Assembly: GCA_013416795.1 (NCBI GenBank)
Contig: RQSC01000015.1
Coordinates: 43,696-107,695 of the forward strand
Reading direction: 5' to 3'
Length of the DNA: 64,000 nucleotides
Origin: Prasinococcaceae sp. CCMP 1430
Lineage: Eukaryota > Plantae > Prasinodermophyta
The notes below the pieces were generated by a model. The model was not told the DNA's origin, did not search any database, and saw only the letters and a program-made list of their open reading frames with translations. The position numbers were made by a program, and so were the translations under genes. Shown here one piece after another: positions 10,042-26,369 of this stretch (within the stretch, counting starts at the first letter, position 1; each line of letters opens with the position of its first letter).

Positions 10042-10132
10042 CATACGCGCGTACTCGTGTGTGCCTGCAGATTATCACACACACGCAGACGCACGCACAC
10101 ACACACACGCACACACACACACACGAACGAGC

Positions 10133-10199
<67 letters not shown>

Positions 10200-10581
10200 G
10201 TGCAGCGGCAAGCGCTCGCGCATACGCACACACGCGTGCAGCGGCGCACACACACACGAGCAGCAGCACAAGCTCCCACAGCGTCACCCACGCACACGCG
10301 CACCTGAGGTATCTCTTTTTTGTGTAGCATATATATACCCACGGGAGATCGCATGTTCGCGTTCAAAATGCATTCGATTTGATGTGGATTTTTTTTCTTG
10401 CGCGCGTGCGATTGTGTGCGCGCGCGCGGTGTGGCAGCGCTGCCTGGCTGTTGGCGGTGGCGCCACTGCTCGCGCGGCGGGCAGCGCCCCTCGGACTTCT
10501 TTCACGCGCGCGTTCGCGCGGCGACGGCCTCTTCGTACCTCCGCGCGCGCGCGCGCGCGCGCCAGCCTCGCGGGGGCGGAG

Positions 10582-11409
10582 ATGGTCGGTGGCGACGCGG
10601 GCAACAGCCCCGGCGTCCGCATCGGCGGTAGTGTAAGCATCGGCGGCGCTGGTCCCGCGGGCGCGACTGCCGAGAGCGCGCGCCAGGCGCTGCTGCTCGC
10701 CACACAGGCGCTCGGTGTCAATGCGGCTGCAGTGAACGAGGCGCGGAAGGAGCGCGACGAGGAGCGCGCCCTCAGGGCTGCCCTCGAAGAACTGCTGTTT
10801 GAGTTTGAACACGTGAGCACGGATGATGTCCTCGTCACCGCGGTGAAGAGCGGCTCATTGCCGCTGCTGCGCCGGGCGCTCGCGCTCGGCGCCGGCTTGG
10901 ACACCAGGGATGACGCTTCCGGCTCGACTCCGTTGTGCTTGGCAGCTGCGTTTGATCAGCCTGACTGCGTCCGACTCCTGGTGGAGGAGGGCGCCGACAA
11001 GGACAAAACAGACAGCGAAGGCAGGGCGCCCGTGCACCTCGCGGCGAGGCACAGCAACGTTGAGTGCCTGCGGCTGCTGCTGAACGCAGGCGCAGATCGC
11101 GAGAAGATCTGGGCGAAGAAGGGCCTAACGCCTTTGACTCGCGCTGTTGGTCTACGCAATGTCAACTGCATCAGAGTGCTCCTCGAGGCGGGCGCCGACA
11201 GGGACAAAAAGTGCGGGTGGGGGTACACCCCTCTGCAAATCGCAACGCGGTACAACTACTTGGACTGCATGCGGCTGCTCCTCGAGGCGGGCGCCGACGC
11301 GTCCGTGCGCGGCCACAAGGGCGCGACGGCGCTCGACCTCGCCGTTGGCTTCGGCCACAACGAGGCCGCGGCGCTGCTGCGCCAGTACGGCGCGCCCTGC
11401 GCGCCGTAA
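10582..11409 (+). CDS. Ankyrin-repeat cluster gene A1 (one N-terminal helical module, divergent repeats), intronless
   Basis: ORF MVGGDAG..ARQALLLATQALGVNAAAVNEAR..GSTPLCLAA..GRAPVHLAA..GLTPLTRAV..GYTPLQIA..GATALDLA. Confidence 0.88.
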   Translation: MVGGDAGNSPGVRIGGSVSIGGAGPAGATAESARQALLLATQALGVNAAAVNEARKERDEERALRAALEELLFEFEHVSTDDVLVTAVKSGSLPLLRRALALGAGLDTRDDASGSTPLCLAAAFDQPDCVRLLVEEGADKDKTDSEGRAPVHLAARHSNVECLRLLLNAGADREKIWAKKGLTPLTRAVGLRNVNCIRVLLEAGADRDKKCGWGYTPLQIATRYNYLDCMRLLLEAGADASVRGHKGATALDLAVGFGHNEAAALLRQYGAPCAP

Positions 11410-11781
11410 CGCGAACGAGTGCACACACCCACGTACAGTATGTCAAGCCATTGTCGGCTCGCGCAGGCGCAGGCACGCGCACACACACCACCAGCACACG
11501 CGCATTTGAGCGCGCACGCAGGCCTGCAGGCAGCCCCGCGAGAAAGAGCAGCGCGCGCGCACACGACGAAGTCGATGCGCGCGCGCGCTCACACAGAGTC
11601 TCACACAGCCACACAAAGTCTCAGGCTTACACAATGCCATCGCAGCGCGGCGGCGCGGCGCGAAAAAACAGCGCGTGCCGGCTGCGCATTTTTGCGCGCG
11701 CGGCCGGCGGCGACGGCAGCGCCACTCCGCGCGCTGTGGTCGGCGACGGCCCATCCTGCGAGCGTTGCGTGAGCGATCGAG

Positions 11782-12459
11782 ATGGGCGCCTTCGATGGTG
11801 GCGCTGCGGGCGCCGGTGGCAGCGGCGGTGCCGCTGGCGCGAAGGCCGAGACTGCGCGGCAGGCGCTGCTGCTCGCCACGCAGGCGCTCAGGGTAAATGC
11901 GGCCGCCGTCAAGGAGGCGCGCGAGGCGCGCGAGGCGCTGAGGGTGGCCGTCGAATTACTACTCTGCGCGCACGGCGCAGACGGTGCTCTGTGGGGAGCG
12001 TGTACAAGAGGCTCATTGCCGCTGGTTCGCACGCTCATCGAGGCCGGCGCCGACGCGAACAGGGCAAATCCAGACGGCGCAAATGCGTTGCACTACGCCA
12101 CCTGGGCCGGTCACTCCGACTGTCTGCCGCTGCTGCTCGAGGCAGGCGCCGACGCGAACAAGGCAAATCAAGACGGCGAAGTTGCGTTGCATCTCGCCGC
12201 CTTGAAGGGCCACCCCAACTGCCTGCGGCTGCTTCTCGAGGCTGGCGCCGACAAGGACAAGGTCAACACGGTTGGCGACACACCCCTGCATCTAGCGGCT
12301 GAGGTTGGAGACCTTGGTTGCCTGCGGCTGCTGCTCGAGGCGGGCGCCAACACATCCGCTCGCAACAAGGATGGCGAAACGCCGCTCGACATCGCCGAAC
12401 AATACAACAAGGAGGCCGCGGCGCTGCTGCGCCAGCACGCCGCCTCCCGCGCGCCGTAG
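11782..12459 (+). CDS. Ankyrin-repeat cluster gene A2, intronless
   Basis: 225-aa ORF: Gly-rich leader, ARQALLLATQALRVNAAAVKEAR module, then GANALHYA, GEVALHLAA, GDTPLHLAA and GETPLDIAE repeats. Confidence 0.9.
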   Translation: MGAFDGGAAGAGGSGGAAGAKAETARQALLLATQALRVNAAAVKEAREAREALRVAVELLLCAHGADGALWGACTRGSLPLVRTLIEAGADANRANPDGANALHYATWAGHSDCLPLLLEAGADANKANQDGEVALHLAALKGHPNCLRLLLEAGADKDKVNTVGDTPLHLAAEVGDLGCLRLLLEAGANTSARNKDGETPLDIAEQYNKEAAALLRQHAASRAP

Positions 12460-12683
12460 AGGGCTAAAGTCACCCACGACCGGACCCGCACGCCACGCGA
12501 GCGCCTGCAGCGCTGCAAGCGCGCGTGCCTGCAGCACAGTCACGCGTCATGCAGGGCGTCTCTCGCGTGCTACGGCTTAGCAGCACTTATTCGTGTTCAC
12601 ACTCGTTCGTGTTGATGGGGCTTTTTTCAGGCGCCCACTCACTTTCTTTCTTTCATAAACGTGCGTGCGTTTTGACGACGCGA
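12460..12683 (+). repeat. Conserved inter-gene module of the ankyrin cluster (3' flank running into the next promoter); copies at about 15895-16115, 20130-20352 and 24300-24520
   Basis: Shared CCCACGACCGGAC..GCGAGCGCCTG..CATGCAGGGCG.CTCTCGCGTGCTACGG..CCCACTCACTTTC..GTGCGTGCGTTTTGACG sequence in these copies. Confidence 0.88.
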
Positions 12684-12721
12684 GGGCAGGGGCGCACCGG
12701 CGCAGGCGCCACACAGCGCAC

Positions 12722-12865
12722 TCGCGGTACAACTCCTTGGACTGCATAAGGCTGCTCCTCGAGGCGGGCGCCGACGCGTCCGTGCGCGGCCACGAGGGCG
12801 CGACGGCGCTCGACCTCGCCGTTCGCTTCGGCCACAGCGAGGCCGCGGCGCTGCTGCGCCAGTAA
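12722..12865 (+). pseudogene. Ankyrin unit A3: internally deleted relic of an A1-type gene
   Basis: Close match to the 3' end of A1 (11247 onward). It is joined directly to promoter/leader sequence and stops at CGCCAG-TAA where A1 has CGCCAG-TAC. Confidence 0.82.
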
Positions 12866-13111
12866 CACCGCCTCCACACGGCCTTGTTTCCATTCGCGCG
12901 CTCGCTTGCACGAATTTGAGTGCGTTTTGACGTGCGCTGTTTTTTCGCGCGATGCGATGCGATCGAGACGGCGGAGGCGCCACACAGCGCGCGCGAGGCA
13001 GCCGGCGGTGCCCACGAGGCCCGCGTGCGTCCCGAGGCGGAAGCCTCTCTGAACGAGCCTGCGCGCGTACGCCGTACGCTCGGCGGGGCGAGCGCAGTCG
13101 CGCTCGCGGGG

Positions 13112-14194
13112 ATGGACGCCGGCGGCGCGGGTGGCGGCGCGAGCGGCGTGCGGCTGGCTGTTGGGATGGACGCCGGCGAGGGGAGCGGCGGCGCGGGCGA
13201 GGCGTGGGTGGCGTCGGCAAGGAGCGTGCGGCACGCGGTGTTGCTTGCAATCCAGGCGCTCGGCGTCAACGTGGCGGCCGTGTGCGAGGCACGTGCAGCC
13301 AGTGACGCGATAAGGGCGGAGATCGAGTGGGCCGACAATGGATGCAAGGATGCAGTCGCCTGCAATGCCGGCGCGTCTGTCGACGCCACTGACAATGCCT
13401 CGGGTGACAGCAAATGTGGTGCTGGAGGCCTCGACGCTGCATCGGCGGAGCGCTCGCGCATGGTGCTGCTGCTGGTGACGCAGGTGTTCGGCGTCAGCGC
13501 CAGCGCCGTGCAAGAGGCGCGCGCGGAGCGCGACGCTTTGAAGGAGGAGCTCGACCTGTCCCTTACTAGCGTGAAAGCTTTTGGTGGCGAAGCGATTGTA
13601 CCATGGCCTTTTTTGGACGTGAACCTACTGCTCTGGTGTGCCGCGCGGTGCGGGGCGGAGTACACGCTCCGCCACGCGTTGTTGCGAGGCGCGAATGTGG
13701 ACGTGGACGCACTTGCGGACGCAATTTTTGGCGGCAACATTAATTGCCTGCGGCTGTTGCTCGAGGCCGGGGCCGACATAGACAAGGCCGATTGCAATGG
13801 CATGACAGCGTTGCATGAGTCGGCTCAGTGCGGGCACGTTGATTGCCTGCAGGTGCTGCTCGAGGCGGGTGCCGAGACGGACAGGGCAGATCGGAATGGC
13901 AGAGTTGCGTTGCACTACGCCACCTGGAGGGGCCATGTCGACGGTCTCGACTGCCTGCGGCTGCTGCTGGGAGCCGGCGCCGACATAGACAAGGCCGATG
14001 TCAATGGCATGACACCGTTGCATTTCGCGGCGATCAGCAGCCCTCCTGAGTGCCTGCGGCTGCTGCTCGAGACGGGCGCTGACGCATCCGCTCGCAACAA
14101 GGAAGGCTACACGCCGCTCGACAGCGCCGAAGCACACAACAACAAGGAGGCCGCGGCGGTGCTGCGCCAGCACGCCGCCACGGAGACGCCATAG
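13112..14194 (+). CDS. Ankyrin-repeat cluster gene A4 (two N-terminal modules, 3 internal repeats)
   Basis: MDAGG start; RHAVLLAIQALGVN and RMVLLLVTQVFGVS modules; N-cap LLWCAARCGAEYTLRHALLRGANVD; C-cap GYTPLDSAE..EAAAVLRQH. Confidence 0.9.
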   Translation: MDAGGAGGGASGVRLAVGMDAGEGSGGAGEAWVASARSVRHAVLLAIQALGVNVAAVCEARAASDAIRAEIEWADNGCKDAVACNAGASVDATDNASGDSKCGAGGLDAASAERSRMVLLLVTQVFGVSASAVQEARAERDALKEELDLSLTSVKAFGGEAIVPWPFLDVNLLLWCAARCGAEYTLRHALLRGANVDVDALADAIFGGNINCLRLLLEAGADIDKADCNGMTALHESAQCGHVDCLQVLLEAGAETDRADRNGRVALHYATWRGHVDGLDCLRLLLGAGADIDKADVNGMTPLHFAAISSPPECLRLLLETGADASARNKEGYTPLDSAEAHNNKEAAAVLRQHAATETP

Positions 14195-14646
14195 AGGGCT
14201 GCGCTCGCCCAGAGCGGTGTTCACCCCACGCGCGCGCCCCTGCCGCCGCAGCCACCGCCTCGCCCCCGCGCGACGGCGCCCAACAGGGGAGCGAGGCAGG
14301 GCGCACTCGCGCGCAGGCGCAGGCTGGCGGGTGCTCTCGCGGCCAGGCTCCAGCCAGGCTCGCGTGACTCCTCCTCCCCCACGCGCATTAGGGTTGGGTT
14401 TTAAGGTTAAATATTAGGGTCTGTACGTCATCACACAGCTCAACCTGCAATGTGATAGCGGCGCATTTTTTTGCGCGCGCGCGGGTGCGGGCGCGCGCAC
14501 GGCAGACAGCTGAGGCGCCACACAGCAGCGCGAGAGAGGCAGCCGAGGGTGCCCACGAGCCCCGCGTGCGTGTCGAGGCGGAAGCCTCTCTGAACGAGCC
14601 TGCGCGCGTACGCCGTGCGCTCGACGGGGCGAGCGCGCTCGCGGGG

Positions 14647-15894
14647 ATGGACGCCGGCGGCAGCGGCGGCGGCGGGAGCGGCGGCGCGGGCGAGGCGTGG
14701 GTCGCGTCGGCATGGAGCGCGCGCCACGCGGTGTTGCTTGCAATCCAGGCGCTCGGCGTCAACGAGGCTGCCGTGCGCGAGGCGCGTGCAGCCAGTGCCG
14801 CGATAAGGGTGGAGATCAGATGGGTCGGCATTGGATGCATCGGAGCGATCGGCTGCGATGCCTGTGCGGCTGTCGACGCCACTGACAGTGCCACGGTTGG
14901 CAGCAACCGTGGTACCGGAGGCCTCCGCTCTGCGTCGGCGGAGCGCTCGCGCCAGGCGCTGCTGCTGGTGACGCAGGCGTTTGGCGTCAGCGCCCTCGCC
15001 GTGCAGGTGGCGCGCGCGGAGCACGACGCTTTGAAGGAGGCGCTCGACCTGTCCCTTACTAACGGGAAGCCTATGGGTGGCGTAGCCATTGTGCCAGATC
15101 CGTGGGATGCGAACGTACTGCTGCTCCGGCGTGCCGCGCGGTGCGGTGCGGAGTACACGCTCCGCCACGCGTTGTCGCGAGGCGCGAATGTGGACGCGGA
15201 CGCACTTGTGTACGCAATTCTTGGCGGCAATATTAACTGCCTGCGGGTGCTGCTCGAGGCCGGCGCCGACAAGGACAAGGTCCCAAATACGCACCCCAGA
15301 CCTCTGTACTACGACGCAGCGCCGGGCCGGATCGACTGCCTGCGGTTGTTGCTGAAGGCTGGCGCCGACAAGAACAACCGCCACGCGTTGTCGCGAGGCG
15401 CGAATAGAGACGCGGGGACACTTATGTACGCAATTTCTGGCGTCAAAATTAAGTGCCTGCGGCTTGTGTTCGAGGCCGGGGCCGACATAGACAAGGCCGA
15501 TTTCAATGGCAAAACACCGTTGCAGGAGTCGGCTAAGTGTGGGTACCTTGATTGTCTGCGGGTGCTGCTCGAGGCGGGTGCCGAGAAGGACAAGGCAGAT
15601 TGGGATGGCAGAGTTGCCTTGCACGGGGCCGCCTCGCGGGGCCATGTCGACTGCCTGCGGCTGCTGCTCAAGGCGGGCGCCGACATAGAAAAGGCCGATT
15701 TCAATGGCATGACACCGTTGCATTTCGCGGCGATCCGCGGCCGTCCAGAGTGCCTCCGGTCGCTGCTCGAGGCGGGGGCCGACGCATCCGCTCGCAACAA
15801 ATATGGCCAAACACCGCTCGACGTTGCCGAACTGAGCAACCACAAGGGGACCGCGGCGCTGCTGCGCCAGCACGCCGCCACGGAGGCGCCGTAG
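14647..15894 (+). CDS. Ankyrin-repeat cluster gene A5 (contains a re-inserted N-cap segment)
   Basis: MDAGG start, two modules and ankyrin repeats. RHALSRGAN occurs at 15163 and again at 15379. Confidence 0.9.
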   Translation: MDAGGSGGGGSGGAGEAWVASAWSARHAVLLAIQALGVNEAAVREARAASAAIRVEIRWVGIGCIGAIGCDACAAVDATDSATVGSNRGTGGLRSASAERSRQALLLVTQAFGVSALAVQVARAEHDALKEALDLSLTNGKPMGGVAIVPDPWDANVLLLRRAARCGAEYTLRHALSRGANVDADALVYAILGGNINCLRVLLEAGADKDKVPNTHPRPLYYDAAPGRIDCLRLLLKAGADKNNRHALSRGANRDAGTLMYAISGVKIKCLRLVFEAGADIDKADFNGKTPLQESAKCGYLDCLRVLLEAGAEKDKADWDGRVALHGAASRGHVDCLRLLLKAGADIEKADFNGMTPLHFAAIRGRPECLRSLLEAGADASARNKYGQTPLDVAELSNHKGTAALLRQHAATEAP

Positions 15895-16329
15895 AGGGCC
15901 GAGCTCGCCCACGACCGGACCTGCACACCAAGCGAGCGCCTGTAGCGCTGCAAGCGCGCCTGCGTGCGGCACAGTCGCGCGCCATGCAGGGCGCCTCTCG
16001 CGTGCTACGGATGAGCAGCACTCATTCGTATTTACACTTGTTCGTTTTGATTAGGCTTTTTTCGTGCGCCCACTCACTTTCTTTTTCTTTGACAAATGTG
16101 CGTGCGTTTTGACGTACGTTTTTTTTCGCGCGATGCGATGCGATCGATGCGACGGCGGCGCTGTTTTTTTTTGCGCGCGTGCGCGTGCGCGGGCGGAGGC
16201 GCCACACAGCAGCGCGCGAGAGGCAGCCGGCGGTGCACACGAGCCCCGCGTGCGCCTCGAGGCGGAAGCCTCCCTGAACGAGCTCACGCGCGTGCACTCG
16301 ACGGGGCGAGCGCACTCGTTCGACCGGCG

Positions 16330-17460
16330 ATGGACGCCGGCGTCAGCGGCGTCGGCGGAAGCGGCAGCGCGGGCGAGGCGTGGGTGGCGTCGGCACGGAG
16401 CGCGCGCCACGCGGTGTTGCTGGCAATCCAGGCGCTCGGCGTCAACGAGGCGGCCGTGCGCGAGGCGCGTGCGGAGAGTGACGCGATAAGGACGGAGATC
16501 GAATGGGCCGAAAATGGATGCAATGCACACGAAGCAATCGGCTGCAATGCCTGCGCGGCTGTCGACGCCATTGACAATGCCGCGGGTGGCAGCGGCAGCG
16601 GTGCCGGAGGCCTCCGCTCTGCGTCGGCGGAGCGCTTGCGCCGGGCGCTGCTGCTGGTGACGCAGGCTTTTGGCGTCAGCGCCGTCGCCGCGCGGGAGGC
16701 GCGCGCGGAGCTCGCTGCCTTGAAGTTGGAGCTCGACCTCTCCCTAACTGACGGGAAGCCTCTGGGTGGCGGAGCGATTGTGCCAGAACGTTTGGACGTG
16801 AACGTACTGCTCCGGCGTGCCGCGTTCGCCGGTGCGGAGTATGCGCTCCGCCACGCGTTGTCGCGAGGCGCGAATGCGGACACGAACGCACTTGGATGCG
16901 CAATTAATGGCGGCAAAATGAACTGCCTGCGGCTGTTGCTCGAGGCTGGCGCCGACATACACAAGGCCATTTGCAACGGCATGACACCGTTGCATTTGTC
17001 GGCTCAGCGCGGGCACCTTGATTGCCTGCAGTTGCTGCTCGAGGCGGGTGCCGAGACTGACAAGGCAGATCTGGATGGCAGAGTTGCGTTGCACTACGCC
17101 GCTTCGTGGGGCCGTCTCGGCTGCTTGCGGCTGCTGCTGGAGGCTGGCGCCGACAAGAAGAAAGGAGACACGATTGGCGACACACCGCTGCATCTAGCGG
17201 CTGCGATTGGACGCCTTGATTGCCTGCAGCTGATGCTCGAGGCTGGCGCCGACAAGGACAAGGTCGACACGATTGGCGACACACCCCTGCATCAAGCGGC
17301 TCGGGTTGGACACCTTGGTTGCCTGCGGCCGCTGCTCCAGGCGGGTGCCGACGCATCCGCTTGCAACGACGTTGGCCAAACACCGCTCGACATTGCCGAA
17401 GCACACAACAACATGGAGGCCGCGGCGCTGCTTGTCTATGTGACACTTTGTTGCGATTAG
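16330..17460 (+). CDS. Ankyrin-repeat cluster gene A6 (C-terminal end replaced by unrelated sequence)
   Basis: Family ORF. The conserved EAAALLRQH end becomes EAAALLVYVTLCCD after a junction at about 17432. Confidence 0.85.
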   Translation: MDAGVSGVGGSGSAGEAWVASARSARHAVLLAIQALGVNEAAVREARAESDAIRTEIEWAENGCNAHEAIGCNACAAVDAIDNAAGGSGSGAGGLRSASAERLRRALLLVTQAFGVSAVAAREARAELAALKLELDLSLTDGKPLGGGAIVPERLDVNVLLRRAAFAGAEYALRHALSRGANADTNALGCAINGGKMNCLRLLLEAGADIHKAICNGMTPLHLSAQRGHLDCLQLLLEAGAETDKADLDGRVALHYAASWGRLGCLRLLLEAGADKKKGDTIGDTPLHLAAAIGRLDCLQLMLEAGADKDKVDTIGDTPLHQAARVGHLGCLRPLLQAGADASACNDVGQTPLDIAEAHNNMEAAALLVYVTLCCD

Positions 17461-17777
17461 ACACAACCTCCGATTTGTCGAGCCCGAATAAACATACAGT
17501 ACTTTGCAATGTATGTGCATGCAGTCATGCACGGCACGTCTGCATTTCTTTTGATGCGGCTACTTTTGACGCGCGCAACCTCGCAGCACGTGCGGGCACG
17601 TGCCGGCACGGCGGTGCCACACGGTGCCCACACCACCTCCGCGCGGCGGCGCGCACCGGCAGCAGGCGCTGCGCCGACGCCCGCTCGTGCTGAGGCGATC
17701 GCCCGTGTCGACGTTTGCACGCGCTTGCGCTCGAGGGTCAGCCGAGACCCAGCTCGCTCGCGCGGCTGGCTGTTGGG

Positions 17778-18977
17778 ATGGACGCCGGCGGCTCGGGCGC
17801 CTCGCGCGGCGCGTCGGCGAGGAGCACGTGCCACGCGGTGCTGCTCGCCGCGCGGGTGCTGGGCGCGAACGACGCGGCCGTGCGCGACGCGCGCAGGGAG
17901 TGCGAGGCCGCCGTGGAAGAGCTCAGCTGGACCCTCGACGCGCTCGCCGAGCAGCGCCTGACGGGCAAGCTGCTCCTGAATGCCATGCGGACGGCGGAAG
18001 TGCTGACGCGCGTGTGGGCGGCAGCGGCGGCGGCGAAACAGGCCCACGCGCGACACGTCTCCACTCCTCCGACCGAAGCCCATGGCGCGCCCGCCTTGTG
18101 GGACGCGTGCGCGGGCGGGCACCTGCGGGCGGGCGCGCACGCGCGATGGCAGACGCCCGACGGCGCCGCGCGCGCCAGCCCTGCCGCGGTCGAGTCGGCG
18201 GAGGAGAGCAAGCGCCAGGCACTGCTGCTTACGACGGCGTTCCTGGGCGTCAGCGACGCGGCAGTGCGCGAGGCACGCGCGGAGCGTGACGCGGTGCTCG
18301 AGGAGCTCCGCTGGGCTCTCGACAGGATATACGGGCCGAGCGGCGCGAGCGATGGCGCGAACGACCTGCTCGCTCGTGCCATGCTGGATGGCAAGGAGCA
18401 CGCGCTTCGCCACGCGCTATCACGCAATGCGAGCGTGGCGAGGACAATTGGGGCGGGCCTGTCTCCTCTCCAGCTGGCGGTCGGTCACGGGCACGCCAGC
18501 TGCCTTCGGCTGCTGCTCGAGGCAGGCGCCTACAGCGACGCTCCGAACAAGTACGGCTGGTCCCCCGTCCACGTGACCGCCATCCACGGCCACGCGGACT
18601 GTCTCCGGCAGCTGCTCGAGGCGGGCACCGACGCGGACAGCGAAAGCGCCGGCGGCTTCTCTCCTCTGTACCTCGCGGCCCTCCACGGGAACGCCGACTG
18701 CGTCCGGGCGCTGCTGAGCGCGGGCGCCGACAAAGACATGGCCCCCGCGAGCGGCTTGGCCCCCACGCACGTCGCGGCTCGGCAGGGCAACATCGACTGC
18801 CTGCGCCTGCTGCTGGAGGCGGGCGCCGATGCGCGCGCGCGCGACGCCTGCGGCCACACGGCGCTCGACGTCGCGGAGCGCAACAACCGCAGGGAGGCCG
18901 CCGCGCTGCTGCGCCGGCACGCCGCCCTCCGTGACCGCCGGGCGCCGCAGGAAAGCAAGCGCGCCAGGTGCTCGTGA
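17778..18977 (+). CDS. Ankyrin-repeat cluster gene A7 (most divergent two-module paralog)
   Basis: MDAGG start; CHAVLLAARVLGANDAAVRDAR and RQALLLTTAFLGVSDAAVREAR modules; repeats GLSPLQLA, GWSPVHVTA, GFSPLYLAA, GLAPTHVAA, GHTALDVAE. Confidence 0.88.
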   Translation: MDAGGSGASRGASARSTCHAVLLAARVLGANDAAVRDARRECEAAVEELSWTLDALAEQRLTGKLLLNAMRTAEVLTRVWAAAAAAKQAHARHVSTPPTEAHGAPALWDACAGGHLRAGAHARWQTPDGAARASPAAVESAEESKRQALLLTTAFLGVSDAAVREARAERDAVLEELRWALDRIYGPSGASDGANDLLARAMLDGKEHALRHALSRNASVARTIGAGLSPLQLAVGHGHASCLRLLLEAGAYSDAPNKYGWSPVHVTAIHGHADCLRQLLEAGTDADSESAGGFSPLYLAALHGNADCVRALLSAGADKDMAPASGLAPTHVAARQGNIDCLRLLLEAGADARARDACGHTALDVAERNNRREAAALLRRHAALRDRRAPQESKRARCS

Positions 18978-19111
18978 GCGGTGTCCGCGTCCGCCCCGCG
19001 CGCGCGCCCCTGCCGCCGCAGCCACCCCCTCGCCCCCGCGCGACGGCGCCCACCAAGGGAGCGAGGCAGGGCGCACTCGCGCGCAGGCGCAGGCTGGCGG
19101 GTGCTCTCGCG

Positions 19112-20129
19112 TGGCGGCGGCGGGAGCGGCGGCGCGGGCGAGGCGTGGGTCGCGTCGGCATGGAGCGCGCGCCACGCGGTGTTGCTGGCAATCCAGGCGC
19201 TCGGCGTCAACGAGGCGGCCGTGCGCGAGGCGCGTGCAGCCAGTGACGCGATAAGGGCGGAGATCGAATGGGCCAAAAAAGGAGGGAACAACGACGTGAT
19301 TCGGCGGACAAGCGCCTGCGATGCCGGCGCTGTCCGCGACACCGACGGTGCCGCGGGTGGCAGCGGCAGCGGTGCTGGAGGCCTCCACTCTGCGTCGGCG
19401 GAGCGCTCGCGCCAGGCGCTGCTGCTAGTGACGCAGATGTTCGGCGTCAGCGCTGTCGCCGTGCAGGAGGCGTGCGCTGAGCGCGACGCTTTGAACGAGG
19501 AGCTCCACAAGCTCCTTACTAACGGGAAGCAACTGGGTGGCCCAGCGATTGTGCCAGAACCTTTGGACGTGAACCTACTGCTCAGGCATGCCGCGCGATA
19601 CGGTGCGGAGTATGCGCTCCGCCACGCGTTGTTGCGAGGCGCGAATGTGGACGCACTTGCGTATGCAATTCTTGGCGGCAAAATGAACTGCTTGCGGCTG
19701 TTGCTCGAGGCCGGGGCCGCCATAGACAAGGCCGCTTACTATGGCATGACACCGTTGCATGTGGCGGCTAAGCGCGGGGAGCTTGGTTGCCTGCGGGTGC
19801 TACTCGAGGCGGGTGCCGAGACGGACAAGGCACAATGGATTGGCAGAGTTGCGTTGCACTACGCCGCGTGGTGGGGCCGTCTCGACTGCCTGCGGCTGCT
19901 GCTCGAGGCTGGCGCCGACAAGGACAAGGTCGACACGATTGACGACACACCCCTGCATAAAGCGGCTCGGGAGGGACACCTTGATTGTCTGCGGCTGCTG
20001 CTCGAGGCGGGCGCCGACGCATCCGCTCGCAACAAGGAAGGCGAAACGCCGCTCGAACTTGCCGAACTGAGAAACCACAAGGAGGCCGCGGCGCTGCTGC
20101 GCCAGCACGCCGCCTCCCGTGCGCCGTAA
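19112..20129 (+). pseudogene. Ankyrin unit A8: otherwise intact A5-like coding region that has lost its promoter and ATG
   Basis: 18976-19111 is a copy of the A4 3' flank (14212-14341) fused directly to the GGGGSGGAGEAWVASAWSAR coding sequence shared with A5. There is no in-frame ATG before the first module. Confidence 0.7.
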
Positions 20130-20557
20130 GGGCCGAGCTCGCCCACGACCGGACCCGCATGCCACGCGAGCGCCTGCAGCTCTGCACATGCGTGCGCGTG
20201 CAGCACAGCCATGCGCCACGCAGGGCGCGCCTCTCGCGTGCTACGGCTTACCAGCACTTACTCGTATTTACACTCGTTCGTTTTGATAAGGGCTTTTGTC
20301 GTCCGCCCACTCACTTTCTTTTTCTTTGACAAATGTGCGTGCGTTTTGACGTGCGTTTTTTTTCCCGCGCACTGCGATGCGATCGATGCGACGGCGGCGC
20401 TGTTTTTTGCGCGTTGGCGTGCGCGGGCGGAGGCGCCACACAGCAGCGCGCGAGAGGCAGCCGAGGGTGCCCACGAGCCCCGCGTGCGTCGCGAGATGGC
20501 CGCGTTTCTGAACGCTCTCACACGCGTGCACTCGACGGGGCGAGCGCGCTCCCGGAA

Positions 20558-21109
20558 ATGGACGCCGGCGGCAGCGGCGGCGGCGCGAGCGGCGGCGCGA
20601 GCGGGGCGTGGGTGGCGTCGGCACGGAGCGCGCGCCACGCGGTGTTGCTGGCAATCCGGGCGCTCGGCGTCAACGAGGCGGCCGTGCGCGAGGCGCGTGC
20701 GGAGAGTGACGCGATAAGGGCGGAGATCGAATGGGCCAAAAATGGATGCAGGTGCGCAGTCGGCTGCAATGCCGGCGCGGCTGTCGATGCCAGTTTCAGT
20801 GCCGCGGGTGGCAGCAACTGTGGTGCTAGAGGCCTCGACGCTGCGTCGGCGGAGCGCTCGCGCCGGGCGTTGCTGCTGGTGACGCAAATGTTCGGCGTCA
20901 GCGCCGTCGCCGTGCACGAGGCGTGCGCGGAGCGCGACGCTTTGAAGGATGAGCTCGACCTGTCCCTTACTAGCGTGAAAGCTCTGGGTGATGAAGCGAT
21001 TGTGCCAGAACCTTTGGACGTGAACGTACTGCTCTGGCGTGCCTCGCGTTTCGGTGCGGAGTATGCGCTCCGGCACGCGCTGTTGCGAGACGCGTCTGTG
21101 GACGCACTT
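20558..21109 (+). CDS. Ankyrin unit A9, truncated at the N at 21110 (assembly gap); near-identical to part of A10
   Basis: About 20615-21109 matches about 22826-23320 almost base for base, then N followed by (TG)n. Confidence 0.65.
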
Positions 21110-21110
21110 N

Positions 21111-21194
<84 letters not shown>

Positions 21195-21433
21195 CTGTGT
21201 GTATGCGTGTGTGTGTGTGCGTAGAAGCGCCTCTGCGCCTCTCTGTACGTGGCTGCTCATGCATGCGCGCGCAAGTCTGACGCATGCACGCACGCACGCA
21301 CACGCATACGCTCGCGCACGCCTACACGCGCGTACACCTACGCACACACACGCACACACGCACACACGCACACGCGCGTGCACACGCACGCACACACGCG
21401 CACACACACGTGCACGCGCACGCGCGCATGCAG

Positions 21434-21629
21434 CGCGCTGTCGTCGTGCCGCGCGGTGACCTCCGCGTGCTCCGCCGTCGCCTCGGCCGCCGCTGCCGCC
21501 TCGGCGTCGATCGCGTCGCTCGACGCCCGTCTCGAAGGTGCGTGCGTGTGCGTGTGCGCGTACACACCTGCGAGCACGCATGAACACACGCATACTCACA
21601 CACACACACACGCACACACACACACACAC

Positions 21630-21690
<61 letters not shown>

Positions 21691-21885
21691 GCGGCGTTGA
21701 GGCGCCGCGCGGACGCCGCCGTGGCGGAGCGGCACGCCGCCAACAAGGCGGCGGCGAGGGGCGTCAGGGACGGCAACAGGAGGGCGGCGAGGGAGGGCAG
21801 GCGGGCGAAGGTGCGCGGATGTGTGTGCGCGGGGGGCGGGGCGTCGTCGTTGTTGCGCGTGTGCACGCTCTCGCGCGCACTCACA

Positions 21886-21919
<34 letters not shown>

Positions 21920-21920
21920 A

Positions 21921-21967
<47 letters not shown>

Positions 21968-22076
21968 AATGCGCACGCAAGCTCGTAGTCTTCGCACGCG
22001 CAGGCAAATGCATACTCACACACACACACACACGCTCACGCACACACGCACACACGCACACACACACACACACGCA

Positions 22077-22119
<43 letters not shown>

Positions 22120-22275
22120 CGTGCGCGCGCGCAGCCGTTGCACCTGCCCTCCGAGGCCGAGCTCGCGCTCGCGGCCGGCGCGGCGCGCATGCTCTCCCCG
22201 GACGCGGGCGCGGAGGCGGAGGCGGAGGCGGAGGCGGAGGCGGAGGCGCTCGAGGACTTCCTCGCCGACGCCTGA
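21434..22275 (+). CDS. 3' exons of an unidentified intron-containing gene, lying between ankyrin units A9 and A10
   Basis: Exons 21434-21537, 21692-21810, 22135-22275 splice in frame through GT-AG microsatellite introns: ..SASIASLDARLEAALRRRADAAVAERHAANK..PLHLPSEAELALAAG..EAEAEALEDFLADA*. Confidence 0.65.
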
Positions 22276-22369
22276 GGCGCGCCGATGCGCGAGCAGTCGA
22301 TGTTGTGCACTATGTTTGTATCTACGGGAGGCGCACACTTGTGTGTGTGTGTGTCGATATGTGTGTGAA

Positions 22370-22430
<61 letters not shown>

Positions 22431-22727
22431 GTGCGTGTGTGCGTGTGTGCGTGCGTGTGTGTGTACTAGGATTCGGCGCATTTGTATTTGTTTTGATGTG
22501 GCCCTTTTTGGCGCGTGCAACCTGGCTGGCAGCGTGCGACAGCGGCGCATTTTTTTGCGCGCGCGCAGGCGGGCGGGCGCGCGGCACACAGCGCAGGCGC
22601 CACACAGCAGCGCGCGAGAGGCGGCCGAGGGTGCCCACGAGCCCCGCGCGCGTCGCGAGGTGGCCGCGTTTCTGAACGGGCTCACGCGCGTGCACTCGAC
22701 GGGGCCAGCGCACTCGTTCGACCGGGG

Positions 22728-24299
22728 ATGGACGCCCCGCCGTCGCCGCCGCCGCCCTCGCCGCAAGCCGACCGACAACCCTACCTGCGGCCGCTCCCCT
22801 CGCCGCCGCGCCCGCTCCGCAGGGTGGCGTCGGCACGGAGCGCGCGCCACGCGGTGTTGCTGGCAATCCAGGCGCTCGGCGTCAACGAGGCGGCCGTGCG
22901 CGAGGCGCGTGCGGAGAGTGACGCGATAAGGGCGGAGATCGAATGGGCCAAAAATGGATGCAGGTGCGCAGTCGGCTGCAATGCCGGCGCGGCTGTCGAT
23001 GCCAGTTTCAGTGCCGCGGGTGGCAGCAACTGTGGTGCTAGAGGCCTCGACGCTGCGTCGGCGGAGCGCTCGCGCCGGGCGTTGCTGCTGGTGACGCAAA
23101 TGTTCGGCGTCAGCGCCGTCGCCGTGCACGAGGCGTGCGCGGAGCGCGACGCTTTGAAGGATGAGCTCGACCTGTCCCTTACTAGCGTGAAAGCTCTGGG
23201 TGATGAAGCGATTGTGCCAGAACCTTTGGACGTGAACGTACTGCTCTGGCGTGCCTCGCGTTTCGGTGCGGAGTATGCGCTCCGGCACGCGCTGTTGCGA
23301 GACGCGTCTGTGGACGCACTTGAGTGCGCAATTTTACTCGCAATAGATGGCGGCAAAATTAATTGTCTGCGGGTGCTGCTCGAGGCCGGCACCGACAAGG
23401 ACAAGGCCGACGAGATGGGCCGCGCACCCCTGCATCTAGCTGCTGAGAGAAATACGCCAGACTGCGTGTGGCTGCTGCTCGAGGCGGGTGCCGAGACGGA
23501 CAAGGCAGATCTGGATGGCAGAATTGCGTTGCACTACGCCGCTTGGTGGGGCCGTATCGGCTGCCTGCGGCTGCTGCTGGAGACTGGCGCCGACAAGAAC
23601 AAAGGCGACACGATGGGCCGCACACCGCTGCACAACGCGGCTGAGGTTGGAAACCTTGATTGCCTGCAGCTGCTGCTCGAGGCTGGCGCCGACAAGGACA
23701 AGGTCAACACGGTTGGCGGCACACCCCTGCATCGAGCGGCTGAGTTTGGAAGCCCTGATTGCCTGCGGGTGCTGCTCGAGGCCGGCGCCGAAAAAGACAA
23801 GGCCGACAATGAGGGCCGCACACCTCTGCATCTAGCTCCTCAGGGACATACGCCAGACTGCCTTCGGCTGTTGCTCGAGGCGGGTGCCGAGACGGACAAG
23901 GCAGATCTGGATGGCAGAGTTGGGTTGCACTACGCCGCGTGGTGGGGCTGTCTCGGCTGCCTGCGGCTGCTGTTGGAGGCTGGCGCCGACAAGAACAAAG
24001 GCGACACGGTGGGCCTCACACCGCTGCATGTCGCGGCTGATTGTGGACACCTTGGTTGCCTGCGGCTGCTGTTGGAGGCTGGCGCCGACAAGAACAAAGG
24101 CGACACGATTGGCGACACACCCCTGCATAGAGTGGCTGGGGCTGGACGCCTTGATTCCCTGCAGCTGCTGCTCGAGGCGGGCGCCGACGCATCCGCTCGC
24201 AACAAATATGGCCAAACACCGCTCGACGTCGCCGAAGCACACAGCAAAAAGGAGGCCGCGGCGCTGCTGCGCCAGCACGCCATCCCCCAGGCGCTGTAG
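22728..24299 (+). CDS. Ankyrin-repeat cluster gene A10 (8 internal repeats; Pro-rich N-terminus)
   Basis: Intact ORF MDAPPSPPPPSPQ.. with two modules, N-cap, a 4-repeat block present twice, and C-cap GQTPLDVAE..EAAALLRQH. Confidence 0.9.
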   Translation: MDAPPSPPPPSPQADRQPYLRPLPSPPRPLRRVASARSARHAVLLAIQALGVNEAAVREARAESDAIRAEIEWAKNGCRCAVGCNAGAAVDASFSAAGGSNCGARGLDAASAERSRRALLLVTQMFGVSAVAVHEACAERDALKDELDLSLTSVKALGDEAIVPEPLDVNVLLWRASRFGAEYALRHALLRDASVDALECAILLAIDGGKINCLRVLLEAGTDKDKADEMGRAPLHLAAERNTPDCVWLLLEAGAETDKADLDGRIALHYAAWWGRIGCLRLLLETGADKNKGDTMGRTPLHNAAEVGNLDCLQLLLEAGADKDKVNTVGGTPLHRAAEFGSPDCLRVLLEAGAEKDKADNEGRTPLHLAPQGHTPDCLRLLLEAGAETDKADLDGRVGLHYAAWWGCLGCLRLLLEAGADKNKGDTVGLTPLHVAADCGHLGCLRLLLEAGADKNKGDTIGDTPLHRVAGAGRLDSLQLLLEAGADASARNKYGQTPLDVAEAHSKKEAAALLRQHAIPQAL

Positions 24300-24733
24300 A
24301 GGGCCGAGCTCGCCCACGACCGGACCCGCACGCCAAGCGAGCGCCTGTAGCGCTGCACATGCGTGCGCGTCCAGCACAGTCACGCGCCATGCAGGGCGCC
24401 TCTCGCGTGCTACGGATGTGCAGCACTTATTCAAATTTTCTTTCATTCGTTTTGATGGGGCTTTTTTCGTGCCCTCACTCACTCACTTTCTTTCACAAAT
24501 GTGCGTGCGTTTTGACGTGCGTTTGTTTTTCCGCGCAATGCGATGCGATCGATGCGACGGCGGCGTTTTTTTTTTTGCGCGCGTGCGCGTGCGCGGGCGG
24601 AGGCGCCACACAGCAGCGCGCGAGAGGCAGCCGGCGGTGCACACGAGCCCCGCGTGCGCCTCGAGGCGGAAGCCTCCCTGAACGAGCTCACGCGCGTGCA
24701 CTCGACGGGGCGAGCGCACTCGTTCGACCGGGG

Positions 24734-26369
24734 ATGGACGCCGGCGGCAGCGGCGGCGGCGGGAGCGGCGGCAGCGGGAGCGGGGCGTGGGTGGCGTCGG
24801 CACGGAGCGCGCGCCACGCGGTGTTGCTTGCAATCCAGGCGCTCGGCGTGAACGATGCCGCCGTGCGCGAGGCGCGTGCGGAGAGGGACGCGATAAGGGC
24901 GGAGATCGAATGGATCGGCAATGGATGCCATGGAGCGATCGGCTGCGATCCCGGCGCGGCTGTCGACGCCACTGACAGTGCCGCGGGTGACAGCAAGTGT
25001 GGTGCCGGAGGCCTCCGCTCTGCGTCAGCGGAGCGCTCGCGCAAGGCGCTGCTGCTAGTGACGCAGGTGTTTGGTGCCAGCGCCAGCGCCGTGCAGGAGG
25101 CGCGCGCGGAGCTCGTTGCCTTGAAGGAGGAGCTCGACCTGTCCCTTACTAACTGGAAGCCTCTGGGTGATGAATCGATTATGGCAGGACCTTTGGACGT
25201 CCAAGTATTGCTCCGGCATGCCGCGCGATACGGTGCAGAGTATGCGCTCCGCCACGCGTTGTCGCGAGGGGCGAATGTGGACGTGAAAACACTTATGTTC
25301 GCAAGTTATGGCGGCAAAATGAACTGCCTGCGGCTGTTGCTCGAGGCCGGGGCCGGCATAGACAAGGCCGATTTCTATGACATGACACCGTTGCATGTGT
25401 CGGCTGAGTGCGGGCACCTTGATTGCCTGCGGCTGCTGCTCGAGGCGGGTGCCGAGACGGACAAGGCAGATCTGGATGGCAAAGTTGCGTTGCACTACGC
25501 CGCCTCGCGGGGCCGTCTCGACTGCCTGCGGCTGTCTGCTTGAGGCCGGGGCCGACAAGGACAAGGCCGATGGCATTGGCTTGACACCGCTGCATCTAGC
25601 TGCTGAGAGAAATACGCCAGACTGCCTTCGGCTGTTGCTCGAGGCGGGTGCCGAGACGGGTAAGGTGGATTGGGATGGCAGAGTTGCGTTGCACTACGCC
25701 GTCTCGTGGGGCTGTGGCGGCGGTCTCGACTGCCTGCGGCTGCTTCTCGAGGCGGGCGCCGACAAGAACAAAGGCGACACGATGGGCCGCACACCGCTGC
25801 ATCAAGCGGCTGAGTGCGAACGCCTTGATTACCTGCAGCTGCTGCTCGAGGCTGGTGCCGACATAGACAAGGCCGATTGCAATAGCAGGACACCGTTGCA
25901 TGTGTCGGCTCAGTGCAGGCACCTTGATTGCCTGCAGTTGCTGCTCAAGGCGGGTGCCGAGACGGACAAGGCAGATCAGGATGGCAGAGTTGCGTTGCAC
26001 TACGCCGCTTGGTCGGGCCGTCTCGACTGCCTGCGGCTGCTGCTGGAGGCTGGCGCCGACAAGGACAAAGGCGACACAATTGGCGACACACCCCTTCATG
26101 AAGCGGCTAGGGCTGGACACCTCGATTGTCTACAGCTGCTTCTCGAGGCTGGCGCCGACAAGGACAAGGTCAACACGATTGGCGACACACCCCTGCATAA
26201 AGCGGCTAGAGTGGGATACCTTGGTTGCCTGCGGCTGCTGCTCGAGGCGGGCGCTGACGCATCCGCTCGCAACCACGTTGGCCGCACGCCGCTCGACATC
26301 GCCGAACTAGTCAGAGAAAAGGAGGCCGCGGCGCTGCTGCGCCAGCACGCCACCCCCCGCGCGCCGTAG
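24734..26369 (+). pseudogene. Ankyrin gene A11 (9 internal repeats) with a +1 frameshift; pseudogene or sequencing error
   Basis: An extra T at 25535 in the framework (ctgcggctgTctgcttgag) gives TGA at 25541. The downstream frame 25536-26369 continues uninterrupted ankyrin repeats. Confidence 0.8.

What the first reader, a model, noticed from the sequence alone, without database searches (positions are those of the whole stretch)
10582..26369. Tandem cluster of 11 ankyrin genes that looks like a natural DARPin library (candidate diversifying receptor repertoire)
Seen: 11 co-oriented, intronless paralogs (A1-A11) with N-cap, 2-9 internal ankyrin repeats and C-cap. The framework DNA (GACTGCCTGCGGCTGCTGCTCGAGGC.GG.GCCGAC) is nearly invariant, while residues in D-x-x-G-x-TPLH-x-AA-x-x-G-x-x change from repeat to repeat. 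A10 examples: EMGRAPLHLAAERNTP, LDGRIALHYAAWWGRI, TMGRTPLHNAAEVGNL, TVGGTPLHRAAEFGSP, TVGLTPLHVAADCGHL. These positions are rich in W/Y/F/R/E/C. Established: they are the beta-turn and first-helix positions randomised in designed ankyrin repeat (DARPin) libraries, which form the binding face. Inference: the cluster is a rapidly evolving set of binders under diversifying selection, for example intracellular immune sensors or decoys against viruses or parasites. I do not know of such a system described in green algae.
Basis: partly seen in the sequence, partly recalled or inferred. Interest (0 to 1): 0.88.

Follow-up and report, generated by a model that had tools for sequence, protein, structure and literature searches.

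The report
Fast-evolving ankyrin binder gene cluster
A GC-rich marine alga carries a tandem cluster of about ten transcribed ankyrin-repeat genes whose target-binding surface changes about three times faster than silent sites, and whose copy number differs between close relatives, so it is a candidate recognition repertoire with unknown targets.

Summary
The cluster is real: window 10582-26369, + strand only. It holds 7 intact ankyrin (ANK) genes, 3 defective copies (A7 has no start, A8t is truncated at an N, A11 has a 1-bp frameshift) and one 3' fragment.

Each gene has one or two copies of an undescribed N-terminal helical module, then 3-10 consensus-like 33-residue repeats and a C-cap.

My own pairwise codon model on 34 independent nearest-neighbour repeat pairs gave omega = 2.9 (95% CI about 2.1-3.9) at the six positions randomised in DARPin libraries, against 0.70 for the framework. 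The likelihood-ratio statistic (LRT) against omega = 1 was 49.6. The result replicated on TARA Oceans relatives alone. Synonymous divergence matches non-coding divergence, and null simulations were clean.

One member, A6, is conserved: omega 0.25 and no binding-face change.

Syntenic metagenome scaffolds of close relatives carry 3-4 genes instead of 10, with swapped repeat cassettes.

Probable RNA contigs cover A4-A7 but not the intergenic DNA.

So diversifying selection on a binder family is supported. An immune role is untested.

The closest analogue is the hypervariable ANK repeats of fungal NLRs, but no NOD domain is present here.

This scan noted the same family earlier in another six-gene cluster of this genome (s1-377773), whose follow-up did not show selection.

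The parts
10582..11409 (+). A1: one N-terminal helical module, 4 ANK repeats and a C-cap; intact
   Evidence: ORF and translation; Pfam Ank_2 7.9e-49
11782..12459 (+). A2: one N-terminal module and 3 internal repeats; intact. In the close relative L005 the N-terminus is about 93% identical in DNA but the repeats only 74-80%
12725..12865 (+). 3' fragment of an A1-like gene (last repeat plus C-cap, ends ...EAAALLRQ*); a pseudogene remnant
13112..14194 (+). A3: two N-terminal modules and 4 repeats (one has a 3-residue insertion); intact
14647..15894 (+). A4: two modules and 6 repeats, including a duplicated cap-like repeat; intact; covered by probable RNA contigs with no mismatch
16330..17460 (+). 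A5: two modules (about 16387-16506 and 16624-16749) and 5 repeats. Its alternative C-terminus ...LVYVTLCCD is shared with the TARA relative P0001. Probable RNA contigs cover it
17778..18977 (+). A6: the divergent, conserved member. Its ortholog in TARA scaffolds is 95.3% identical in DNA, omega is 0.25, and no binding-face residue has changed
18978..20129 (+). A7: a 5'-truncated copy joined to the A6 3' region at about 19111. It is in frame with A6 after a single TGA and has no ATG before module 1. Probable RNA contigs lie on 19250-19827
20558..21109 (+). A8t: N-terminal half only, identical in DNA to A10 over the aligned N-terminal region (to 21109), and cut at a single N (21110). It is either a truncated recent duplicate or an assembly artefact
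21110..22400 (.). About 1.3 kb rich in (GT)n/(CA)n microsatellites between A8t and A10
22728..24299 (+). A10: two modules and 9 repeats; intact. A Pro-rich stretch replaces the usual Gly-rich N-terminal tract
24734..26369 (+). A11: two modules and 10 repeats, with one extra T at 25535 (CTGCGGCTG[T]CTGCTT) that shifts the frame inside repeat 3. It is a pseudogene or an assembly error; reads were not checked
16080..16329 (+). Example of the roughly 250-nt upstream region (promoter and 5' UTR) that is duplicated with each gene. It is 98-100% identical between A5 and A11 and is conserved in TARA relatives

Best explanation
This is a lineage-restricted family of cytosolic ankyrin-repeat proteins that has been amplified in tandem.

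Architecture. Each member joins a conserved N-terminal part to a stack of consensus-like ANK repeats whose concave face differs in every repeat. The N-terminal part is one or two helical modules of about 45 residues, separated by a disordered Gly/Ser/Cys linker.

How the locus evolves. It follows birth-and-death dynamics. Unequal crossing-over and non-allelic exchange duplicate, delete and swap whole genes and blocks of 1-3 repeats. Point substitutions at the canonical target-contact positions (2, 3, 5, 10, 13, 14, 16 and 30) are fixed about three times faster than silent changes. The fold-determining positions (4, 7, 8, 11, 18-20, 23-28) and N-terminal module 1 are under purifying selection.

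Inferred mechanism. Each paralog binds a different partner, or a changing one, through its ANK face. The shared N-terminal module supplies a common function such as oligomerisation, localisation or signalling. This pattern fits a genetic conflict with viruses, parasites, selfish elements or non-self recognition, but which conflict is not known.

Shown here: architecture, tandem amplification, selection pattern, copy-number and cassette differences between relatives, and probable transcription. Inferred: binding, the role of the N-terminal module, and the biological target.
For: - Structure. Pfam ANK hits on every unit. The AlphaFold2 model has mean pLDDT 80, with the ANK stack at residues 157-375 above 90 and the N-terminus as two long helices. 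By sequence, the best PDB matches are ankyrin-R/B and DARPins.
- Selection within the window. With 18 independent repeat pairs, omega at the face is 2.5-3.0 even when face codons get their own synonymous rate. The LRT is 10-12.8, p = 0.0016-0.0004, and the rate multiplier is about 1.1.
- Replication. Repeats from TARA loci alone give omega 3.15 and LRT 28.
- Combined 34 pairs. Omega at the face is 2.9, the profile CI is about 2.1-3.9, the framework is 0.70 and the LRT is 49.6.
- Per-column test. Positive selection at positions 2, 3, 5, 10, 13, 14, 16 and 30; purifying selection at 4, 7, 8, 11, 18-20 and 23-28.
- Calibration. The A6 ortholog pair gives omega 0.25, and its neutral distance of 0.079 per site matches the 6-8.5% divergence of non-coding flanks.
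- Code check. Simulations recovered the true omega and gave no false positive in 12 null runs.
- N-terminus. Omega is 0.3-0.44 for module 1 and 0.5-0.8 for module 2.
- Turnover. The syntenic scaffold L005 has 3 genes. L002, L003 and L004, from three samples and assemblers, have about 4. The window has 10. The internal repeats of A2 are replaced by other cassette types in L005, and the A5-like P0001 has more repeats than A5's 5.
- Expression. Mismatch-free contigs of X19 and X20 lie on A4, A5, A6 and A7, with zero depth in every intergenic bin that the DNA runs cover.
- Restricted family. The N-terminal profile finds only 42 representative proteins among 1.84 billion, and 8 of the 10 scanned carry ANK repeats.
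Against: - No target, localisation or phenotype is known.
- Three of the ten copies are visibly defective. Overall omega is about 1 and the framework omega of 0.7 is high, so much of the family is weakly constrained.
- The disordered linker gives omega 1.4-1.8 by the same method. That value is not significantly above 1, but it shows that unconstrained sequence can score above 1 here.
- Exchange between repeats could inflate face differences. My estimate is that it could reach about 1.3-1.5 at most, from the all-pairs values.
- The tests use my own pairwise model, not standard site models that handle recombination.
- Positions 10, 16 and 30 were identified after seeing the data.
- That X19 and X20 are RNA is the tool's guess.
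- Metagenome scaffolds can collapse tandem paralogs, so the copy numbers in relatives are minimum estimates.
Confidence: 0.6

Rival explanations
1. This is a neutral birth-and-death family. Tandem duplicates are drifting toward pseudogenes, and the face positions vary only because they are unconstrained in any ANK repeat. There is no positive selection.
For: Three defective copies and one fragment. Overall omega is about 1.0-1.4. Framework omega is about 0.7. Coding and upstream non-coding regions are similarly diverged between paralogs. The linker scores 1.4-1.8.
Against: Neutral evolution predicts omega = 1 at the face. The observed value is 2.9 with a lower bound of about 2.1, it replicated on separate sequences, and it holds when face codons have their own synonymous rate. 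Synonymous distance equals non-coding distance. Clear purifying selection acts on the fold positions and on module 1. The genes appear to be transcribed.
Confidence: 0.15
2. The omega above 1 is an artefact of mosaic history. Gene conversion keeps the framework DNA young, while old, already different face codons are moved around. Nearest-neighbour pairs then look as if they have many replacement changes and few silent ones.
For: Cassette exchange clearly happens: the A2 repeats are replaced in L005, and repeat types recur in different orders. The framework DNA is similar across repeats.
Against: Synonymous rates at face codons and at the interleaved framework codons are equal, with a multiplier of 1.08-1.17. 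An analysis limited to columns 1-17, where the two classes alternate, still gives a face omega of 4.6 and LRT 38.6. Random repeat pairs give a face pN/pS of only about 1.1-1.5, which limits what imported tracts can produce.
Confidence: 0.1
3. Diversifying selection is real, but it serves a conflict within the species (mating or self/non-self recognition, or meiotic drive and its suppression) rather than defence against pathogens.
For: The same signatures are typical of such systems: a tandem cluster, omega above 1 and copy-number change. In fungi the closest analogues act in allorecognition (PMC4986451, PMC12222747). No viral relative of the module was found.
Against: Nothing here separates this from a pathogen-driven conflict. 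Neither a sexual cycle nor cell fusion is documented by these data.
Confidence: 0.15

Closest known systems
Hypervariable ANK, TPR and WD repeats with high internal conservation in fungal NOD-like receptors (Podospora nwd/het-e/het-d; Dyrka et al. 2014, PMC4986451; PMC12222747; PMC13449251)
   Same: Similar repeats, positive selection at positions on the concave binding face, differences in repeat number, and repeat shuffling within and between paralogs.
   Different: There is no NACHT/NB-ARC domain and no known death or effector domain; a short undescribed helical module takes that place. Repeats are less alike (about 66% framework identity, not 85% or more over whole repeats). The organisation is a tandem gene cluster in a marine alga. 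One member, A6, is conserved.
DARPin libraries (consensus ANK module DxxGxTPLHLAAxxGHLEIVEVLLKxGADVNAx, randomised at positions 2, 3, 5, 13, 14 and 33; from my own knowledge of Binz et al. 2003; general description in PMC8683736)
   Same: A 33-residue consensus-like module with N- and C-caps. Five of the six library positions are individually under positive selection here. DARPins are among the best PDB sequence matches.
   Different: These are natural, germline-encoded genes. Positions 10, 16 and 30 also vary. Cys, Gly and Pro occur at variable positions. An extra N-terminal region is present.
Exon-shuffled LRR/TPR candidate receptors of brown algae (Zambounis et al. 2012, PMC3341825; ROCO genes, PMC11378527)
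   Same: An algal repeat-protein family that diversifies by shuffling repeat cassettes and has been proposed as pathogen receptors.
   Different: Those proteins carry NB-ARC or ROC-COR domains, and each repeat is a separate exon. Here the genes have no introns, contain only ANK repeats, and exchange happens at the DNA level between tandem genes.
Counted ANK gene-family expansions in marine picoalgae (Bathycoccus polar clades, PMC11409870; species-specific ANK orthogroups in Chloropicon, PMC12301720)
   Same: Lineage-specific ANK expansions in small marine green algae.
   Different: Those reports count genes and suggest cold adaptation. They contain no analysis of binding-face selection, tandem structure or an N-terminal module.

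Membership tests
Ankyrin repeat proteins (Pfam clan Ank: PF12796, PF00023) | Tandem 33-residue helix-turn-helix-loop repeats that score above the Pfam cut-offs | tested here: met
   All ten segments hit Ank_2 with E from 1e-28 to 1e-125. The AlphaFold2 ANK stack has pLDDT above 90.
DARPin-like consensus ANK scaffold | Consensus-like internal repeats between an N-cap and a C-cap, with variability confined to positions 2, 3, 5, 13, 14 and 33 | tested here: met
   Repeats are in register with caps. Face identity is 0.11 against 0.66 for the framework. DARPins are among the top PDB matches. These are natural proteins, not designed ones, and positions 10, 16 and 30 vary as well.
Fungal-type NLR with hypervariable repeats | A central NOD domain (NACHT or NB-ARC) | tested here: not met
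   Pfam finds only ANK families in every paralog. Relatives that carry the N-terminal module show only ANK repeats.
Fungal-type NLR with hypervariable repeats | High internal repeat conservation (85% or more amino-acid identity between repeats) | tested here: not met
   Mean pairwise framework identity is 0.66, and whole-repeat identity is lower.
Fungal-type NLR with hypervariable repeats | Positive selection at binding-face positions, with repeat-number variation and shuffling | tested here: met
   Face omega is 2.9 with LRT 49.6. Repeat number and cassettes differ between relatives.
Viral ANK/F-box (PRANC) host-range proteins | A C-terminal PRANC or F-box-like domain after the ANK repeats, and viral origin | tested here: not met
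   There is no PRANC or F-box hit in Pfam. The proteins end in an ordinary C-cap. GC content is uniform across the window. IMG/VR holds no relative of the N-terminal module.

The most novel reading that the evidence does not exclude
The family is a germline-encoded innate recognition repertoire of a marine alga that works without a NOD domain. ANK binding faces are diversified by cassette shuffling and positive selection to bind viral or parasite proteins. The conserved N-terminal helical module acts as a new oligomerisation or signalling domain that triggers the response.
Probability: 0.2. Interest if true: 0.85.

Novelty: new variant of a known kind. Interest (0 to 1): 0.62.

Why it matters
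How marine picoalgae recognise viruses and other antagonists is largely unknown, and NLR-type receptors are scarce or absent in many of them.

This locus has the evolutionary signature of a recognition repertoire:
- a transcribed, fast-turning-over family of ANK binders;
- omega of about 3 exactly on the binding positions used in engineered DARPins;
- large copy-number differences between close relatives sampled by TARA Oceans;
- a conserved N-terminal module restricted to this lineage.

That makes it testable. The paralogs can be tagged, pulled down and compared between strains that resist or succumb to particular viruses. It would also extend the fungal strategy of similar repeats with hypervariable contact sites to a photosynthetic protist, in proteins that lack a NOD domain.

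Tried and rejected
- All-against-all dN/dS among the 49 repeats. Face positions are saturated (pN 0.64-0.74), so the ratio of 1.1-1.5 says little. I replaced it with independent nearest pairs.
- Nei-Gojobori counting on the pairs gave 1.56-1.74 at the face, with marginal significance. The maximum-likelihood model superseded it.
- A UBA-like fold for the N-terminal module. There is no Pfam hit. AlphaFold2 gives long helices or helix-break-helix at pLDDT 58-84, not a confident three-helix bundle. The N-terminus-only model was too poor for a fold search, so I ran none.
- The ESM Atlas feature search on the N-terminus gave no usable hit.
- Viral origin or viral homologues. An IMG/VR scan with the N-terminal profile found none, and GC content is uniform.
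- Organism identity. Exact look-ups of A1 and A2 are not in the protein collection, sequencing-run names are coded, and naive flank ORFs gave no Pfam hit except a weak TamB-like match. The organism stays unidentified, and 'green alga' is unverified.
- One optimisation with the F3x4 codon-frequency model stuck at its starting value. I repeated it from several starts.
- My own ORF listing for the flanks had a coordinate bug and was discarded.
Full report
**1. Observation**

The window is 64-74% GC throughout. Every ANK motif lies on the + strand between 10.5 and 26.4 kb. Stop-to-stop translation and Pfam show ten ANK-coding segments, with Ank_2 E-values from 1e-28 to 1e-125.

The units are as follows.
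- Intact genes starting at a conserved ATG (MDAGG... or similar): A1 10582-11409, A2 11782-12459, A3 13112-14194, A4 14647-15894, A5 16330-17460, A6 17778-18977 and A10 22728-24299.
- A7 (18978-20129) begins in frame directly after the TGA of A6 and has no ATG before its first module.
- A8t (20558-21109) is only an N-terminal half. It is identical in DNA to A10 over the aligned N-terminal region. It stops at a single N, followed by about 1.3 kb of (GT)n/(CA)n.
- A11 (24734-26369) has one extra T at 25535 inside a repeat.
- An A1-like 3' fragment lies at 12725-12865.

So '11 paralogs' means 7 intact genes, 3 defective copies and one fragment.

It never occurs on the minus strand.

I extracted 49 repeats in a fixed 33-codon register. 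All 49 have different residues at positions 2, 3, 5, 10, 13, 14 and 16. Mean pairwise identity is 0.11 there and 0.66 in the framework.

Recurrent repeat types appear in different orders and numbers in different genes. These are a cap-like type, a 'GMTPLH.SAQ' type, a 'DLDGRVALHYAAWWGR' type, a 'DTIGDTPLH' type, an 'ERNTP' type and a last repeat followed by the C-cap.

**2. Anatomy beyond the repeats**

Every full-length member has an N-terminal region that Pfam does not recognise. It contains helical modules of the form SAR.ALLL..QALGVN.AAV.EAR.E..., one copy in A1 and A2 and two copies in the others. A Gly/Ser/Cys-rich linker separates the copies.

An AlphaFold2 model of A5, built with a 29-sequence alignment, has mean pLDDT 80. 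The ANK stack (residues 157-375) is above 90. The two modules are long helices (14-61 and 99-141) at pLDDT 60-84, and the linker is disordered. Folded alone, the N-terminus reaches only pLDDT 58, so I ran no fold search.

A profile of the N-terminal region finds only 42 representative proteins among 1.84 billion. Of the ten I scanned, eight carry ANK repeats, one has no Pfam hit, and the weakest looks like a bacterial false positive. No relative exists in IMG/VR and the ESM Atlas gave nothing usable.

By sequence, the ANK part is closest to ankyrin-R/B and to DARPins among solved structures. That reflects how close the repeats are to the ANK consensus.

**3. Is the variable face under selection?**

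Comparing all repeats with each other is uninformative, because face positions are saturated. I therefore took disjoint nearest-neighbour repeat pairs: 18 in the window, with DNA distances of 0.07-0.28.

Nei-Gojobori counting gave omega 1.56-1.74 at the face, 0.69-0.83 in the framework and 1.00 overall.

I then wrote a pairwise Goldman-Yang likelihood model. It shares kappa and class-specific omega values across pairs, gives each pair its own distance, and takes codon frequencies from these genes.
- With the a priori DARPin positions (2, 3, 5, 13, 14, 33), omega at the face is 2.6-3.3 and omega = 1 is rejected, with LRT 21-31.
- Giving the nine face codons (the six plus 10, 16 and 17) their own synonymous rate changes little. 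Omega is 2.5-3.0, the rate multiplier is 1.08-1.17, and the LRT is 10-12.8, p = 0.0016-0.0004.
- Restricting the analysis to columns 1-17, where face and framework codons alternate, keeps the signal.
- The result replicates on 16 pairs made only of repeats from TARA Oceans scaffolds, with omega 3.15 and LRT 28. It also replicates on 33 window-versus-scaffold pairs, with omega 3.16 and LRT 59.
- The 34 independent pairs together give omega 2.9 at the face, a profile 95% interval of about 2.1-3.9, framework 0.70 and LRT 49.6.
- A per-column test finds omega above 1 at positions 2, 3, 5, 10, 13, 14, 16 and 30. It finds purifying selection at 4, 7, 8, 11, 18-20 and 23-28.

Three controls support the result.
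- Calibration. The A6 ortholog pair gives omega 0.25. Its neutral distance of 0.079 per site equals the 6-8.5% divergence of the adjacent non-coding DNA, so silent sites are not unusually slow.
- Simulation. My code recovers the true omega values and gave no false positive in 12 null data sets.
- Internal contrast. N-terminal module 1 has omega 0.3-0.44 and module 2 has 0.5-0.8. The disordered linker has 1.4-1.8, based on few changes and not significantly above 1.

Caveats remain. The framework omega of about 0.7 is high. Three copies are defective. Positions 10, 16 and 30 were picked after seeing the data. The method is not a standard site model that handles recombination. Exchange of tracts between repeats could add face differences, but random repeat pairs give a ratio of only about 1.1-1.5.

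**4. Comparison with relatives**

The best protein matches are unnamed proteins from TARA Oceans and other marine metagenomes. They are 58-73% identical over 84-88% of the query, N-terminal modules included. One cluster is orthologous to A6.

Scaffold L005 comes from a close relative, with flanks 93-94% and A6 95.3% identical. It spans the whole locus from the left flank to the right flank but holds only three genes: an A2-like gene, A6, and one A5/A11-like gene. In its A2 ortholog the N-terminus is about 93% identical in DNA, while the internal repeats are only 74-80% identical and belong to other cassette types.

Scaffolds L002, L003 and L004 come from three samples and three assemblers, from a more distant relative. 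They also run from flank to flank, with about four genes. One gene has the A1 start fused to an A2 body with one extra repeat. Another consists of the A1 ANK part alone.

L001 has a different gene upstream of A6. P0001 shares the unusual C-terminus and upstream sequence of A5 but has more repeats than A5's five.

A6 itself has no change at any face position between the window and L005.

Metagenome assemblies can collapse tandem paralogs, so these copy numbers are minimum estimates. The agreement of three independent assemblies argues that the smaller cluster is real in that taxon.

**5. Expression and introns**

Twenty runs from 16 studies hold the stretch 14400-20200.

Two runs that the tool guesses to be RNA (X19, X20) give mismatch-free contigs on A4, A5, A6 and A7. 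They have zero depth in the A4 upstream and A4-A5 intergenic bins (14400-14787, 15952-16145), and in 17504-17697 between A5 and A6. The DNA runs X1 and X2 cover every bin. This pattern fits transcripts, but the RNA label is a guess.

No GT..AG joint was seen. The joints that were reported are assembly links through the shared Gly-coding repeat.

A 1,841-bp DNA contig, identical in X1 and X2, confirms A6 and its junction with A7.

**6. Interpretation**

The data fit a tandemly amplified family of intracellular ANK binders. Its canonical binding face is under diversifying selection, and its genes and repeat blocks turn over by unequal recombination. The family also contains a conserved member (A6) and a conserved N-terminal module that probably supplies a shared function.

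What the proteins bind, and whether the conflict involves viruses, parasites, selfish elements or self/non-self recognition, is not known.

**7. Comparison with what is known**

The closest described system is the hypervariable ANK, TPR and WD repeats of fungal NLRs. These show positive selection at concave-face positions, repeat-number polymorphism and repeat shuffling (PMC4986451; PMC12222747 and PMC13449251).

This family is not an NLR. It has no NOD domain, and its repeats are less alike than the fungal 85% criterion.

Brown-algal LRR/TPR exon shuffling (PMC3341825) is an algal parallel with a different architecture. ANK expansions have been counted in Bathycoccus and Chloropicon without any analysis of selection.

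My literature searches found no description of such an ANK-only family in algae. The library is limited, so this is not proof of absence.

**8. Earlier notes of this scan**

The same family was noted in another six-gene cluster of this genome (s1-377773). Its follow-up reported transcription and the shared N-terminal module, but said its data did not show selection. The codon tests here go further and do show it for this cluster and its TARA relatives.

Notes s1-400030 (N-terminal module) and s1-400109 (cassette shuffling) describe the same stretch and agree with what I found.

**Verdict**

This is a new variant of a known kind, with interest 0.62.

Noticed in passing
window 18975-19111: The A6 stop codon (TGA) is followed in the same frame by A7, which has no start codon of its own. 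The first 137 nt after the stop are the A6 3' region, also present in relative L005. The A7 body is joined at about 19111 in a Gly-coding (GGC)n tract. Stop-codon read-through would give an A6-A7 fusion protein. Probable RNA contigs lie on A7, but depth is very low across the junction.
   Followed up: partly
window 20558-22400: A8t is identical in DNA to the A10 N-terminus over the aligned region, up to a single N at 21110. After that come about 1.3 kb of (GT)n/(CA)n microsatellites. This could be a scaffolding artefact rather than a real truncated gene.
   Followed up: partly
window 22728-22830: In A10 a Pro/Ser-rich stretch (PPSPPPPSP...) replaces the usual Gly-rich N-terminal tract (GGSGGGG). 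The reverse complement of its DNA encodes Gly runs, which suggests a small inversion of the (GGC)n tract.
   Followed up: partly
window 17430-17460 (A5 C-terminus) and P0001: A5 ends ...EAAALLVYVTLCCD instead of ...EAAALLRQHAA..AP. The TARA relative P0001 ends ...LVYVTFCCS. So this alternative Cys-Cys C-terminus is conserved. It might be a lipidation site.
   Followed up: no
window about 16080-16329 and the matching region upstream of A3, A4, A8t, A10 and A11; also L007 and L002: About 250 nt upstream of each ATG are conserved among paralogs and relatives (motifs TGTGCGTGCGTTTTGACGTGCG and GGCGGAGGCGCCACACAGCAGCGCGCGAGAGGCAG). Between A5 and A11 this region is 98-100% identical, which is more conserved than the coding sequence.
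   Followed up: partly
L002 428-1628 (also L003, L004): In a more distant relative the first gene combines the N-terminal start of A1 with an A2 body carrying one extra repeat. It is followed by a 126-residue gene that is the A1 ANK part alone. This looks like a product of unequal recombination between A1 and A2.
   Followed up: partly
window 32895-36815 (+): A 1306-codon ORF has a weak TamB-domain match at its C-terminal end (E 1.9e-05). It may be a TIC236/TamB-like envelope protein. The other long flank ORFs I tried had no Pfam hit.
   Followed up: no
window about 10060-10200: A (CA)n microsatellite lies just upstream of A1 and is also present at the start of scaffold L002.
   Followed up: no
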